Origin: Octopus sinensis
Taxonomy: Eukaryota
DNA length: 64,000 nucleotides
Direction of reading: 5' to 3'
NCBI RefSeq assembly: GCF_006345805.1
Contig: NC_043008.1
Span: 45,756,001-45,820,000, forward strand
Part shown: positions 36,326-43,987 of the stretch, piece after piece
Layout: each line of letters opens with the position of its first letter
Numbering within the stretch: position 1 is the stretch's first letter
Notes under the pieces: generated by a model
What the model was told of the DNA's origin: nothing
Seen by the model: only the letters and a program-made list of their open reading frames with translations
The model's database searches: none
Position numbers and translations under genes: made by a program

Positions 36326-36747
36326 TAGCATTAAAGACCCGTCGTTGCCGGGTCATAGTGCTAGTGCACGTATATATGTGTATATATATGTGTACATATT
36401 ACATGTACATCTATATATATATACATCTACACATAAAATGCAAAATACAAAATTATATATTGATATCACTAGTGATAACAATACTCAAAATATATAACAG
36501 ACTGGAATTGATTTTTTATTACCCACAAGGGGCGAACATAGAGGGGACAATACAACATGATATGGGGTCAGATTTGCGGATGGGATTACAAAAATGATGA
36601 GCTTTTAAAAATATACCAAAAATATCAAAAAGTCGAATGAAAGAACAGACCAAAAGACATTACGGATGGAGTGAGGGCGGGTTTAGCTCGCACCCTACGA
36701 ATCCCCCCCCTCACCAGTGATACTTTGGTTTTCGTCCTGGTTTACAT

Positions 36748-39700
36748 TTATGTGGTATCATCCACACGCAACTTTCGTGCTACATCCTTCCATCTTTCTT
36801 CATACACTTTCTTAGTCAGGCATTTTTTCTCCAGCCCTATCTTCAATTTCAGGTGGAAGATGAAGTAATTCATCAATCCAGGGCAAGAGATGAACTTGCC
36901 TGACCGTAAACCTTTCACCCTAGTCTTTCAAATCACCTCTCTCGCAATTGCAACTACAACGAAAAAACAATTCTTACCTTCTTTCGCGAGGAAATCTGGT
37001 GGGTAAATTTTTATAATAGACTCAGTCGACAGCTGTACTCTTCGTGTGCTTGGCAACAGCTGTTCGGCATAAACCCACACCTCTGACACGACCGAACATT
37101 GAACAATAGCATGCGGGACGGTTTCCCTATCCCGCTTGCATCTTGGGCACGTCGGACTGTCTTGGCCACCGTGCCTTGCGAGTTTATCCCGAACAGGTAA
37201 AGCTCCTCTGTAACATTGACATGCCAGAGACTTCTGGAAGTTGTCCAGGGTCTTCGGCCTGAATGTACGTTGGAACAGACTGGCCAGCTGATTATCGTCG
37301 AGACCTAGGGCTTCCCCTAAGGTATCTTCACATTCCGTCTCTACCAGCCCTCTATAGAAGAATGCCGTGGAACCCCCACTGCAGGCGTTGCCCGAGCGAC
37401 GGAATAGCAGGAGAGCCTTGCGACACTCCGTGTACCATGTACCCAGTTTCGATCTACGATTCAGCCATGCTTCCCATCCACCGAAACTAGTGAACTTGGG
37501 AAACATCAGTTTTGCCAGCGGAGACCTCACCCGTTCACCATCCAGGTAGAGCCACAGATGTCTTAACCTCAGCGCATGTCTGCGCATCATCAGCCAAGGC
37601 ATCCCTAGACCACCCTTTAACGGTTGTTGACAGCAAGTAGAGCGTTTCACAAGCGGTTTCCCGCTCATCCACAAGAAGTAGAAGAGCTGTCTTTCCAACT
37701 TGATCAACCACGAATCAGGGCAAGGAACAACGGATAGGCGGTTGGTGATAACCGATGCGATAAACACATTGGCTACCTCCGCCCTTTCTTTTCAGGGATA
37801 GCCACCGTCAAGACCAGGTATTGACTACTGCAGCCACCCTGCTCGATACCTCGCCACAGTTCTTCTCTATTTGGAGGTCTGGTCCAAACCAAACCCCTAG
37901 CAACTTAATCGGACCCTCCGTCCAACGTCCCACGACGCTGTCAGGAGGTATCGACTTGCCTCTCCAGGTTCCGAGCTGCAAGCCGACTGACTTTTCACGA
38001 TAAACCTTTGCTCTTGTCACCGTCTCGTAAACCTCTATGGCCTTACCTACCCTCTGTAGGCGATCCATTTCGGTTACGATGATGGTGATGTCATCCGCGT
38101 AGGCTGACACCGATTTTCCACAACCTGGCTGTCTCGGGATGCCGCTCAGTTTTAGCAGTGATGGCTCAAGAGCCACTACGTACAAAAGCGGGGAGAGCGG
38201 AAACCCTTGACGAACCGAGCGCTTGATGTTGAACGGCTTCGAAAAGAAGCCGTTCACTCGAACTACCGGGTTGATGTTATCGTAAATTTGAATAATCCAC
38301 CTGAGGAAGCCAAGGCCCAGTCCGAACTGTACTAGAACGTATAACAGGTAGCGATGGTCGACCCTATCAAATGCTTTAGATTGGTCTAAATGGGCCACTG
38401 CCCCACCCTTGCCAGAGATACTATTAAACCCCTCTATAGTGTACCGCATAAGATGGAGATTATCCTCAATGGATCTGCCGGGAACGGCACTTGTCTGTGC
38501 CTCCCCGATCAGACCATCCGCGACACGCGCCAATCTGTTCGATAACACTTTGGCCAAAATCTTCAACTCTGTGTTTAGCAGAGGGATGGGCCTGAAATTA
38601 TCAATGCACTCCCCCTTGTTCGAGTCCTTTCTACTCCCCGGCGCACAGATCTGGGAATGAACCCGTTCTGCTGCCAGTTCGCATAGACCTCCGTCAGTAG
38701 GTGCCCGAACAAGTCTGGCATACTCTTATATAATTCATAGGGTAGACCATCCAACCCCGGCGACTTGCCCGCGCCGCAGTCCGCCATCGCCTCAGCCACT
38801 TCCTCAGGCGTGATTGGCCTTTCACAGCCCTCCGCATCTCGCCCCGATAGGCGCGGCAGTCCGTCGAGGAGGTCCGTAAAGTCCCTCCTTCTATCCGGTC
38901 CGCCGCCCCCACCGAAAAGCTGAGCGAAGTGCTCCTGAAAGGCCTCACACATCTCCTCGAGTTCGTTTATCAACTTACCTTGTTGGACCGTCAAAGATCG
39001 AATTGTGGCATCATTACCACGCTGAGCTTCCACCACTCGGGCCCATCTCGCGGCGTTGATTCCCTTAACAACCCACTGCGCGGATCCTATCCCTAACAAT
39101 GCAGCCCATGTGTTTGGCCTAGAGGTGCTGGTTTAACGCCAGTCTCTTGGCCGTCACCTGATCCGCAGAGCCAGTTTTCAAGGCTTCCTCTAATTCCTTA
39201 ACTAGAGTTGATTCCCTCCTAGCCTCTCTAGCCACTAATCCTATGCTATATCTAATAGACTCGAATTTGATGGCTCGCTTGAGGGCATACCACCATTTGT
39301 TATTAATGATTGCACCAGATAGCGCCCTCCGAATTATAGTCCTAATCCGGTCTCTGTACTCCTTAATCGCCAAAAGGGACGTATTAAGTTTACAATAACC
39401 GGAGCTTCTATTATTAACCTTATCTACGTCAAGCTTACGGGTGACTATTTTATGATCACTGTAGCTGACCGGGTAAAACTGTGGACACTTAGCTATTTCT
39501 CTGTCTACTTTTCTAATTAGTATTTTATCTGTGTATGACCTGGAAGATCCGTCGCTGCTTGACCATGTCCACAATGGAGCGTTCGGAAATTCCAACCTAT
39601 AAGGATCTGCTAGCTCAAAGTGACTTAGCAATTCCAGGAAGCCAATGTTACCTTTTCTATCTGGACGCAAGCCAACGCAATCCACACCCGCCTTGCAAAT

Positions 39701-40134
39701 TGTGTTAAAGTCGTTTAGCACAACTAATGAATGTGAAGTACCAAGAAACTTCTCCAGCTCTCGAAAATAATCACTTTGCCCCTTTTGTTTGGGTGCGTAA
39801 ATTGCAACCAGTCTGATAACTTTACTGTTACTGAACATCAAATCCATGACGACCGGCCTACCTTCTGGATCTGAAAAAATTAACTTTTTCTCAAAAACCC
39901 GGTTTCTTTTTAACAGGACCAACACCCCACCCCCGCAGTTAGGACTGGCCAGAGAGAAAACAAACTCTCGTAGCCGTCAAACAGCGGGAGTAGACCTCTT
40001 GGTCCCTCTAACCGGGTTTCTGTAGCAACAATGACATACAAATTACGCCACCTGATATCATTAAGGAAACGACTCTGCTTCCAGTTTGATCCCAGACCGC
40101 GCCCATTTAAACAACCAACATAAATGCAATTCAT
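36748..40134 (-). pseudogene. Tx1/L1 ORF2 (APE endonuclease, RT, CCHC)
   Basis: It reads GCLNGRGL...VATETRL, LNDFN, SDHK, KSPGLDGLP, LDQSKAFDRV, SVRQGFPLSPLLY, AYADDIT and CPRCKRDRETVPHAIVQC across at least 5 ORF pieces. The final stop is at 36748. Confidence 0.92.
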
Positions 40135-40142
40135 GACTTACC

Positions 40143-43375: not shown

Positions 43376-43409
<34 letters not shown>

Positions 43410-43467
43410 GAGAGAGAGAAAGAAAGAAATTCACCGTCTTATCACAACTAACAACACCCGGACAATT
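41675..43467 (-). mobile_element. ORF1-only Tx1-related element (HAL1-like architecture)
   Basis: A frameshifted ORF1 homologue spans about 43290-41911 (KFGTVEVRC, RVKIPNIPPEV, VEGRKPNCYLCGTKGHIKKEC). It has no ORF2. A short 3' UTR ends in a tail resembling that of the neighbouring LINE. Confidence 0.8.
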
Positions 43468-43987
43468 AACAGACTGGAAATGTTAGTTCTTCTTTTTTCT
43501 CTACATTGCATACTTTATAGACAATAGTCTTTTCTTTGATTTAGTTTTTTATTATCCATCTGGATTATTCCATTTCTGCACGCTAATTTTATTGTTAATT
43601 TATTCCCATTCATGTGAAACCACTTATTCACGTTCAAGTCATTGATGCAATTTTATACCAATTGCTATTTTTACTTTTGTTATGTTACGATTATATTATA
43701 CTTTAGTTTGATTTTAATTATTACTTACTACATATAATTCAATTGTTATTATTATTTTTATTGTTAAAGTGAAACCATCTGAGAAATATTTTTGTTTCAC
43801 TTTTAACACGTAATACTGAAATAGTGTAGAAGATATGATATTGCTATGGGCTCGCTCTAGGCAAGAAGTTGAACATTTCTTTTGCCCATGAAACTACATG
43901 GACCCTAAGTAAGGTATGTGTAAAATTTGAATGAAATTGGTTGCGTAGTTCTCACGTTTTAGGGAAACACACAGACAGACAGACATT

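What the first reader, a model, noticed from the sequence alone, without database searches (positions are those of the whole stretch)
36496..43479. Head-to-tail Tx1 array punctuated by three copies of one 12-mer
Seen: AACAGACTGGAA (TTCCAGTCTGTT in element sense) occurs at 36496-36507, 41663-41674 and 43468-43479. These positions are right after the 3' tail of the full LINE, between the two units, and before the 5' end of the ORF1-only unit. I did not see it elsewhere in the window. Established: many Tx1-clade LINEs are sequence-specific, and repeated insertion into a duplicated target builds such arrays. Inference A: two different elements hit the same 12-bp target, which matches no snRNA, tRNA or rDNA target I recognise. 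Inference B: the motif is the elements' own Inr-like 5' end (CAGT) and new copies insert in front of existing heads. Either would be an autonomous plus non-autonomous targeted system, here antisense within a host intron.
Basis: partly seen in the sequence, partly recalled or inferred. Interest (0 to 1): 0.85.

Follow-up and report, generated by a model that had tools for sequence, protein, structure and literature searches.

The report
LINE array inside a Helitron-like repeat
The repeated 12-letter motif is the preferred landing site, inside a roughly 3000-copy Helitron-like repeat, of a small family of L1/Tx1-type jumping genes and their ORF1-only partners, which makes this a new example of the known 'retrotransposon that targets another transposon' theme.

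Summary
TTCCAGTCTGTT (element sense) occurs three times, exactly at the ends of a degraded 5.2-kb APE+RT LINE and a 1.8-kb ORF1-only unit, both on the minus strand.

The two outer flanks of the array are the two halves of one copy of a ~740-bp repeat, here called X. X has Helitron-like ends and (TA)n flanks. It holds the 12-mer once and is uninterrupted at 2,000-3,000 other places in this 2.7-Gb genome. The array is therefore inserted into X at the 12-mer, and the motif is repeated at every junction.

About 45 further tail+12-mer junctions exist genome-wide. They lie in X copies whose outer flanks are unrelated to each other, and the arrays differ in composition.

The family is not strictly site-specific. 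One copy sits off target with a clean 17-18-bp duplication. Off-target full-length copies still begin with (T)CCAGTCTGT, so the LINE's own 5' end carries most of the motif.

This works like Tx1L in Tx1D, but Tx1-clade membership was not tested. I rate it a new member of a known kind, of moderate interest.

The parts
43468..43479 (-). 12-mer copy 1 (TTCCAGTCTGTT in element sense). It continues the upstream half of repeat X and is followed by the 5' end of the ORF1-only unit.
41675..43467 (-). ORF1-only non-autonomous unit ('unit2', 1793 bp). It has a 5' UTR containing a (CT)n run. Its ORF1 remnants (43301..42333) lie in three frames and include a CCHC knuckle. It has a K/E-rich stretch and a conserved C-terminal ORF (42297..41911). 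Its 3' tail module (41735..41675) is related to the LINE tail.
41663..41674 (-). 12-mer copy 2, between the unit2 tail and the LINE. It doubles as the LINE's own 5' terminal sequence.
36508..41662 (-). Degraded full-length L1/Tx1-type LINE (5155 bp). The 5' UTR is followed by ORF1 (41541..40143, frameshifted, CCHC). ORF2 lies in four pieces: APE 39976..39119, RT 39132..37808, and the zf-RVT C-terminus 37791..36928. The 3' UTR ends in the tail ...TTGTATTGTCCCCTCTATGTTCGCCCCTTGTGGGTAATAAAAAATCAA.
36496..36507 (-). 12-mer copy 3, between the LINE tail and the downstream half of repeat X.
43480..44000 (-). Upstream half of repeat X (consensus positions about 44-560, 94.9% identical to the consensus). 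Its extreme 5' end is overwritten by (TA)n in this copy.
36325..36495 (-). Downstream half of repeat X (consensus 573-741, 96.8% identical). The last 40 nt (36364..36325) form a hairpin and end in CTAG, directly followed by (TA)n.
36270..36324 (.). (TA)n microsatellite flanking the 3' end of X.
44001..44110 (.). (TA)n microsatellite flanking the 5' end of X.

Best explanation
Shown: the window holds one copy of a ~740-bp dispersed repeat (X) that has been split at its single TTCCAGTCTGTT by a head-to-tail array. The array is an ORF1-only unit followed by a full LINE, both in the same orientation as X, with the 12-mer present at all three junctions.

Inferred mechanism: the LINE's APE endonuclease nicks the bottom strand of X between ...AACAA and TTCC (X position 560|561). 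Reverse transcription is primed there. The top strand is opened 12 bp further on (572|573), so the 12-mer is duplicated on each insertion. Both copies remain targets, so later insertions of the LINE, or of ORF1-only units that share its ~45-nt 3' tail module and use its proteins in trans, build mixed arrays.

Precision is probably helped by homology at both RNA ends. The LINE RNA starts with (T)CCAGTCTGT, which looks like target sequence captured by starting transcription in the upstream copy. It ends in AACAA, often reading a few bases (TTC, TTCC) into the downstream copy.

Specificity is a strong preference and not absolute. Off-target insertions with ordinary 17-18-bp duplications occur.
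For: 1. The joined flanks are contiguous elsewhere. All 40 scored places matched the 205-nt query over essentially its whole length at 94-96% identity, out of 632 candidates.

2. Whole-genome pattern counts, all with a control count of 0:
- 3003 copies of the 12-mer plus X-down.
- 2075 copies that also carry the 10 X bases upstream.
- 800 copies matching a second 39-nt probe that reaches 15 X bases upstream.

3. X carries the 12-mer once, at consensus positions 561-572. In the window, X positions 44-573 and 558-743 flank the array.

4. The junction recurs:
- 8 of 30 sampled LINE 3' ends run tail|TTCCAGTCTGTT|X-down, and 3 more run tail|motif|head of another element.
- There are 41-45 tail+12-mer junctions genome-wide. 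Many come in pairs about 5.1-5.2 kb apart, that is, a LINE bounded by the motif on both sides.
- The flanks beyond X at 8 such loci are mutually unrelated.

5. Array composition differs between loci. In the window X-up is followed by unit2; in L095, L097 and L105 it is followed by a LINE; the array on contig C4 runs LINE-unit2-unit2-LINE-X-down.

6. In L093, L094, L096, L098, L101 and L103 the full 12-mer is followed by ATACG and then the element's own CCAGTCTGT. This places the upstream break after ...CTGTT.

7. A true retrotransposition signature is seen off target. L112/L010 has the duplication TATCC(C/G)TGCATGAATAC(C), and the element starts at CCAGTCTGTG.

8. The 3' tail module is conserved across 61 distinct tails of LINEs and ORF1-only units. 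The unit2 ORF1 is a collinear homologue of the LINE ORF1 at 30-44% amino-acid identity.

9. No known RNA gene lies at the site.
Against: 1. The lineage is small. There are about 45 junctions against about 3000 X copies and 577 tails of the wider family.

2. 19 of 30 sampled 3' ends have other flanks, so this is not a strict site-specific element.

3. The LINE's own ends resemble the target (5' CCAGTCTGTT, 3' AACAA). The true length of the duplication therefore cannot be read from most junctions.

4. Sister subfamilies carry different but seemingly homologous 12-17-nt motifs at the same tail-head position. This fits a motif that evolves with the element as well as it fits a fixed genomic target.

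5. Some loci are plain segmental duplicates (L009/L010, L107/L108).

6. The evidence is limited:
- There is no enzymology and there are no start-site data.
- There are no polymorphic or orthologous empty sites.
Confidence: 0.75

Rival explanations
1. Pure reading of the reader's inference B. The motif is simply the elements' own 5' end (an initiator-like start), and new copies insert immediately in front of existing heads. X is hit only because it happens to contain, or once captured, a head-like sequence.
For: - Off-target full-length LINEs keep (T)CCAGTCTGT at their 5' end (L091, L110, L112).
- CCAGTCT fits the generic initiator consensus YYANWYY (from established knowledge; not measured here).
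- Related subfamilies have diverged motifs at the same position: TT[CG]CAGTCTTCATTGAG, CATGTCTGAAATCTA, CATGGAGGAAAGCTA and CA[CT]GGCTCCAAGCTA.
- An 18-nt stretch of X, 62 nt upstream of the motif, resembles the LINE tail end (z = 4.9).
Against: - X downstream of the motif has no similarity to any head (z between -1.6 and 2.2).
- About 2,000-3,000 X copies carry the motif with no element next to it.
- Several loci show X-up followed directly by a first element (window, L095, L097, L105).
- Copies with the ATACG spacer show a complete target 12-mer in addition to the element's own copy.
Confidence: 0.12
2. The array was made in a single integration event. The reverse transcriptase reached the 5' end of the LINE RNA (...the complement of TTCCAGTCTGTT) and jumped to the 3' read-through end of a second RNA, the ORF1-only unit. 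That RNA ends in the same motif, so the result is a concatemer with exactly one 12-mer per joint.
For: - The RNAs appear terminally redundant. The 5' end is (T)CCAGTCTGT. Off-target 3' ends stop at AACAATT, AACAATTC or AACCATTCC, which indicates read-through into the downstream motif.
- The joints are exact in every array seen.
- End-to-end template jumping is an established property of some non-LTR reverse transcriptases such as R2 (established knowledge; not tested here).
Against: - Nothing in the sequence separates this from repeated insertion.
- The arrays contain units of very different subfamilies and states of decay.
- X copies with a single element also exist.
- It still needs the first event to be targeted to X, so it is a sub-mechanism of the main model and not an alternative to targeting.
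Confidence: 0.2
3. DNA-level amplification. A loaded X (X plus array) was copied by Helitron transposition, segmental duplication or unequal crossing-over, so the many X-flanked arrays are not independent insertions.
For: - Some loci are evident duplicates: L009/L010 share flanks, L107/L108 have the same structure 129 kb apart, and contig C4 holds mirrored pairs.
- X occurs in tandem in some places (L035, L047).
- A recurrent upstream neighbour, tail GGGTAGGAATAAAACAA + 12-mer + LINE, is seen at 10 or more loci.
Against: - Array composition and the first element after X-up differ between loci.
- LINE 3' ends at on-target loci differ by 4-17%.
- Flanks beyond X are unrelated. This excludes segmental duplication, though not Helitron transposition of a loaded X.
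- The window array joins two different elements, which tandem duplication cannot produce.
Confidence: 0.06

Closest known systems
Tx1L inserted in Tx1D (Xenopus laevis), and target-preferring Tx1-clade LINEs in general (Keno, Kibi, Koshi, Mutsu)
   Same: An APE-type LINE of the L1/Tx1 superfamily whose copies sit at one precise position inside a multicopy non-autonomous DNA-transposon-like repeat, in one orientation. The Tx1 clade is known for target preference, and Tx1 is inserted in Tx1D, a non-autonomous piggyBac family (PMC4494074; PMC3747384).
   Different: The host repeat here looks like a non-autonomous Helitron and not a piggyBac element. Specificity is relaxed, with off-target copies that have normal duplications. 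The lineage is small (about 45 junctions). Mixed arrays include ORF1-only partners. Tx1-clade membership was not tested by phylogeny. The organism is probably a cephalopod.
R1 and R2 type rDNA-specific LINEs, where flanking target sequence in the transcript helps precise integration
   Same: Target-derived sequence at the RNA ends. Here that is (T)CCAGTCTGT at the 5' end and read-through TTC(C) at the 3' end. Co-transcription with the target is said to strengthen target-specific integration (PMC4494074). Tandem copies share the duplicated target.
   Different: The target is not a gene for a functional RNA. R2 uses a restriction-like endonuclease, whereas this element has an APE domain. The role of homology is inferred here from junction sequences only.
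HAL1 ('half-L1') non-autonomous L1 derivatives
   Same: Unit2 and its relatives keep an ORF1 homologue, lack ORF2 and share the 3' end of the autonomous family. HAL1 is a non-autonomous L1 derivative encoding only ORF1p that arose several times (PMC5753468).
   Different: The unit2 ORF1 is only 30-44% identical to that of the neighbouring LINE. It has its own 5' UTR module, so it is an old separate lineage and not a recent deletion derivative. Its relatives form long head-to-tail arrays.
Non-autonomous Helitrons (for the target repeat X)
   Same: The consensus starts with TC after A and ends in CTAG before T. A GC-rich hairpin sits 11 nt from the 3' end (dG -11 kcal/mol, z = -4.9). Internal tandem duplications and occasional tandem copies occur, and X has no coding capacity.
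   Different: X is always embedded in (TA)n, so the exact ends and the A|T insertion site cannot be proven. No autonomous Rep/helicase partner with the same ends was sought.

Membership tests
Non-LTR retrotransposon, L1 superfamily (L1/Tx1) | ORF2 with an N-terminal APE endonuclease followed by a reverse transcriptase | tested here: met
   Pfam Exo_endo_phos (E = 1.9e-4, below the curated cutoff; the N-terminus is missing) and RVT_1 (2.5e-28). The nearest solved structures are human L1 ORF2p, with RT at 1e-20 and APE at 7e-4.
Non-LTR retrotransposon, L1 superfamily (L1/Tx1) | C-terminal zinc-binding domain after the RT, and an ORF1 with a CCHC knuckle | tested here: met
   zf-RVT at 1.3e-8 on 36928-37791. 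CCHC motifs are present in both ORF1s: Pfam zf-CCHC in unit2, and CFGCGKKGHVRAEC in the LINE.
Tx1 clade (as opposed to the L1 clade proper) | RT/APE phylogeny places the element with Tx1 reference sequences | not testable with these tools
   No reference set of clade sequences was available. The best named relative is an unclassified cuttlefish protein at 49% identity. An Octopus vulgaris repeat annotation lists L1-Tx1 families (PMC13282606), which is only circumstantial.
Tx1 clade / target-specific LINEs | Copies inserted at one defined sequence in one orientation, with the same junctions in independent loci | tested here: met
   11 of 30 sampled 3' ends lie at the motif, about 45 junctions exist genome-wide, and the flanks beyond X are unrelated.
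Tx1 clade / target-specific LINEs | Strict specificity (essentially all copies in the target) | tested here: not met
   19 of 30 sampled 3' ends have other flanks. One off-target copy has a clean 17-18-bp duplication.
HAL1-like ORF1-only non-autonomous element (unit2) | Encodes an ORF1 homologue, lacks ORF2, and shares the 3' end with an autonomous LINE | tested here: met
   tblastx shows collinear ORF1 blocks at 30-44% identity. No APE or RT hits were found in unit2. The tail module is shared.
HAL1-like ORF1-only non-autonomous element (unit2) | Mobilised in trans by the LINE's ORF2 protein | not testable with these tools
   Inferred only from the shared tail and the shared target junctions.
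Helitron (repeat X) | 5' TC, 3' CTRR, and a hairpin about 10-12 nt before the 3' end | tested here: met
   In the consensus of 30 copies the 5' end reads ...TATA|TCTTTATATA... and the 3' end reads ...GACCCGGCAACGACGGGTCTTTAATGCTAG|TA. Fold dG is -11 kcal/mol, z = -4.9.
Helitron (repeat X) | Insertion between A and T without target duplication, shown by an empty site | tested here: inconclusive
   Both flanks are always (TA)n. This is consistent but cannot be resolved.
Helitron (repeat X) | An autonomous Rep/helicase partner with the same termini | not tested

The most novel reading that the evidence does not exclude
A 25-bp stretch of the Helitron-like repeat (X 549-573: ...AAAAAAGA|AGAGCTAACAA|TTCCAGTCTGTT|ATAT...) may be a shared landing pad used by several diverging lineages of one LINE / ORF1-only / SINE-like guild.

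- Each lineage would have its own cut position. A second junction, 11 bp upstream of the 12-mer at X 549, carries TTTGAACACATGGAGGAAAGC 402 times.
- Each lineage would have its own junction motif.
- The target-derived motif would supply the transcription start (initiator) for the inserted element. Target choice and promoter function would then be coupled, and the motif would be re-captured at each generation.
Probability: 0.3. Interest if true: 0.65.

Novelty: new member of a known kind. Interest (0 to 1): 0.45.

Why it matters
It adds an invertebrate case, probably a cephalopod, to the very short list of LINEs that home to another transposon and not to a host multicopy gene.

It comes with a natural set of thousands of empty target sites, dozens of filled ones and some off-target copies, all in one genome. 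That makes it a convenient system for asking how APE-type LINEs gain and relax sequence specificity.

It also bears on two further questions. One is how terminal homology to the target guides both junctions. The other is how ORF1-only partners ride on the same machinery.

For genome annotation, it explains mixed head-to-tail arrays that would otherwise be called satellites or mis-merged repeats.

Tried and rejected
1. Rfam scan of 36000-44400 at a permissive threshold. It returned only sub-threshold microRNA-like hits on TA/CT microsatellites. The target is therefore not a known snRNA, tRNA or rRNA.

2. Test of whether X downstream of the motif is an old element head. There was no similarity beyond chance. 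Only an 18-nt tail-like stretch in X-up stood out.

3. Consensus RNA structure of the shared 3' tail. It gave a 4-bp hairpin with no useful covariation. I make no structural claim.

4. Nucleotide similarity between unit2 and the LINE. None was found apart from the tail, so unit2 is not a recent deletion product of this LINE.

5. Three readings rejected on the evidence:
- 3' transduction as the source of the shared downstream flank. In the window both halves of X are present and add up to one complete X within (TA)n.
- A chance occurrence of the motif.
- The one-mismatch hit at 14780 as a fourth copy, because its context is unrelated.

6. Fetching the large array on contig C4 (74.09-74.12 Mb) and further junctions. 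I did not try to obtain those letters by another route and used only whole-genome pattern counts afterwards.

7. The protein database gave no close relatives (at most 60% identity) and almost no names, so it did not help with clade placement.
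Full report
**Observation**

The 12-mer AACAGACTGGAA is present exactly three times on the + strand, at 36496, 41663 and 43468. One unrelated one-mismatch hit lies at 14780. Shuffles predict about 0.39 matches (exact or one mismatch), and none of 100 shuffles reached four.

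On the minus strand the region reads as follows:
- motif
- a 1793-bp unit with ORF1 remnants and a CCHC knuckle but no ORF2
- motif
- a 5155-bp LINE with ORF1, an APE endonuclease, RVT_1 and a zf-RVT C-terminus
- motif

Both elements are broken by frameshifts. The nearest solved relatives of the RT and APE are human L1 ORF2p. The two ORF1s are collinear homologues at 30-44% amino-acid identity, and the elements share no nucleotide similarity except the 3' tail.

**What the flanks are**

I sampled 30 genomic copies of the LINE 3' end. Eight continue tail|TTCCAGTCTGTT| and then run into the same sequence as the window's downstream flank. That flank is therefore itself repeated.

I joined the window's two outer flanks, keeping one copy of the motif, and searched the genome with that 205-nt query. 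All 40 scored places matched it over essentially its whole length at 94-96% identity, out of 632 candidates.

An alignment of 30 such places defines a ~740-bp repeat, X, with these properties:
- It has (TA)n on both sides.
- Its 5' end reads TATA|TCTTTATATA.
- Its 3' end is a 40-nt hairpin ending ...GACCCGGCAACGACGGGTCTTTAATGCTAG|TA (dG -11 kcal/mol, z = -4.9).
- Many copies carry an internal 145-bp duplication, and some places hold X in tandem.
- It holds a single TTCCAGTCTGTT at positions 561-572.

These are the hallmarks of a non-autonomous Helitron. The (TA)n context prevents proof of the A|T insertion site, and no autonomous partner was sought.

In the window, X positions 44-573 lie at 43985..43467 and X positions 558-743 at 36510..36323. 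The array is therefore an insertion into one X copy, in the same orientation as X.

**Numbers**

Whole-genome pattern counts, both strands:

| Pattern | Count | Control |
|---|---|---|
| 12-mer alone | 3304 | 1050 (reversed pattern) |
| 12-mer + 17 nt of X-down | 3003 | 0 |
| Same, plus the 10 X bases upstream | 2075 | 0 |
| 39-mer reaching 15 X bases upstream | 800 | 0 |
| LINE-type tail + 12-mer | 41-45 | 0-2 |
| Tail module alone | 577 | 0 |

Only 33 places match the LINE's 5' UTR. The lineage that uses this motif is thus small. It comprises a few dozen junctions, many in pairs 5.1-5.2 kb apart, which is a LINE bounded by the motif on both sides. It occupies roughly 1% of X copies. That is still an enormous enrichment for a 12-bp site in a 2.7-Gb genome. 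The flanks beyond X at eight on-target loci are mutually unrelated.

**Junction anatomy**

The 3' junction always falls immediately before TTCC, whatever the last bases of the tail (AAAACAA, AAAACCA, AAAAGAA, AAAATCA, AAATCAA, AAATCT). The tail's AACAA equals the X bases just upstream of the motif.

At the 5' side, X-up runs through ...CTGTT and then meets one of the following:
- a unit2 head (AATTGTCC...)
- a LINE head (C/AGTCGATTGC or TTGTCGATTGC)
- in six or more loci, ATACG followed by the LINE's own CCAGTCTGT

The last case shows a complete target copy in addition to the element's copy. This places the upstream break after CTGTT, so the duplication is 12 bp.

Other loci show different breakpoints:
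- Three loci break X at TTCCA| and carry a different head variant.
- Others carry 23 nt of X (AGAGCTAACAA + motif) between a tail and a LINE head. This reveals a second junction position at X 549|550.

Array composition differs between loci. In the window X-up is followed by unit2 and then the LINE. The array on contig C4 runs LINE-unit2-unit2-LINE-X-down. In L095, L097 and L105, X-up is followed directly by a LINE. These are therefore not copies of one event, although a few plain duplicates exist (L009/L010, L107/L108).

**Off-target copies**

Nineteen of the 30 sampled 3' ends have other flanks. None of these flanks contains heads of related elements.

One full-length copy, present at two duplicated loci, has a clean 17-18-bp target duplication, TATCC(C/G)TGCATGAATAC(C), and begins at CCAGTCTGTG. 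Another off-target full-length copy begins at TCCAGTCTGTT (L091). Off-target 3' ends stop at AAAACA, AACAATT, AACAATTC or AACCATTCC.

From this I infer that the RNA begins inside a motif copy and often reads a few bases into the downstream copy. It therefore carries target homology at both ends. CCAGTCT fits the general initiator consensus YYANWYY. That comparison rests on established knowledge and not on a measurement here.

**Mechanism proposed**

The model is target-primed reverse transcription at a preferred nick (X 560|561), second-strand opening 12 bp downstream, regeneration of the target on both sides, and repeated use of it. The users are the LINE and the ORF1-only units that share its 45-nt tail module, which is conserved in 61 distinct tails.

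An alternative for array growth is end-to-end template jumping between terminally redundant RNAs in one event. The sequence cannot separate the two. DNA-level spread of loaded X copies explains a few duplicates but not the varied arrays.

**Wider context seen in passing**

Unit2 belongs to a large family of 1.75-2.2-kb ORF1-only elements that mostly lie head to tail. Different subfamilies carry different 12-17-nt motifs between tail and head.

One of these motifs, CATGGAGGAAAGC, also follows X-up at position 549 as ...AAAAAAGA-TTTGAACA-CATGGAGGAAAGC. This occurs 402 times in the genome. In my loci it is followed by three different continuations, and the 12-mer plus X-down often lies 254-294 nt further on. 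This may be an X variant that serves as the target of another lineage, or it may be a shared head. I could not settle this.

**Comparison and verdict**

The closest analogue is Tx1L in Tx1D, together with the target-preferring Tx1 clade (PMC4494074, PMC3747384). The ORF1-only partner parallels HAL1 (PMC5753468).

The organism is probably a cephalopod:
- The assembly is 2.72 Gb with at least 30 large contigs.
- The best named RT relative comes from a cuttlefish.
- L1-Tx1 and Helitron families are reported in Octopus vulgaris (PMC13282606).

This identification is not established.

Tx1-clade membership could not be tested, and strict specificity was tested and not met. I file the finding as a new member of a known kind: a target-preferring L1/Tx1-type LINE with ORF1-only partners that homes to a Helitron-like repeat. 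It is real, well defined and moderately interesting.

Noticed in passing
X consensus position 549|550 (in the window this would be about 43491|43490, unoccupied here); loci L035, L067, L073, L104: A second heavily used junction lies 11 bp upstream of the 12-mer. X-up followed by TTTGAACACATGGAGGAAAGC occurs 402 times genome-wide, with three different continuations. The motif CATGGAGGAAAGC(TA) is also the tail-head spacer of another ORF1-only subfamily.
   Followed up: partly
window 9380-9517 (+): A short SINE-like element ends in the same 3' tail module as the LINE (...TTGTTTGTCCTCTCTGTGTTTAGCCCCTTGTGGGTAGTAAAGAAAT). The LINE 3' end had 1368 candidate matches genome-wide, so the tail is probably shared with abundant short elements.
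   Followed up: partly
window 51826-53157 (+) and 35293-35598 (+): Host gene. A large exon encodes the C-terminal half of an amino-acid permease (AA_permease_2, AA_permease_C), of the cationic amino-acid transporter type. A likely upstream exon lies just before the array, so the array is probably intronic and antisense.
   Followed up: partly
window 43374-43411 (minus-strand 5' UTR of unit2): A (CT)n/(GA)n microsatellite sits inside the unit2 5' UTR. It is absent from the two related copies on contig C4, where query positions 42-97 are missing.
   Followed up: no
window 41911-42297 (-); loci L094, L098: A C-terminal coding stretch (...RLP(T/E)DSVMDFR.V..IIEY*) with no Pfam match is conserved between ORF1-only units. 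It may be the real C-terminus of their ORF1 after the K/E-rich linker.
   Followed up: no
loci L093, L094, L096, L098, L101, L103 (also L100, L107, L108): The conserved spacer ATACG lies between a full 12-mer and the LINE's own CCAGTCTGT. The motif is therefore present twice, 5 nt apart, at many loci. The off-target copy lacks the spacer.
   Followed up: partly
loci L074 and L109: Two elements of different subfamilies share the same upstream flank (AGTAGAGAGTGGAATATTCCC.TTGGCTATTATTTGCATGA...TTCTTATTTAAA). This hints at another repeated target for a sister lineage.
   Followed up: no
window 20623-21481 (-), 25926-26459 (-), 55561-56402 (+): Other transposon remnants are present: a Mos1/mariner-type transposase (HTH_48), an unrelated RT fragment (RVT_1), and a further LINE-like ORF without a Pfam hit.
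   Followed up: no
window 61800-64000: About 2 kb of imperfect (TA)/(TG)-type microsatellite fills the end of the window and yields long spurious ORFs.
   Followed up: no
X consensus 481-498 (window about 43559-43542, minus strand): The 18-nt stretch TGGATAATAAAAAATTAA inside X resembles the very end of the LINE tail, TGGGTAATAAAAAATCAA (z = 4.9 against shuffles). It may be a coincidence of A-rich sequence or a trace of an older relationship.
   Followed up: partly
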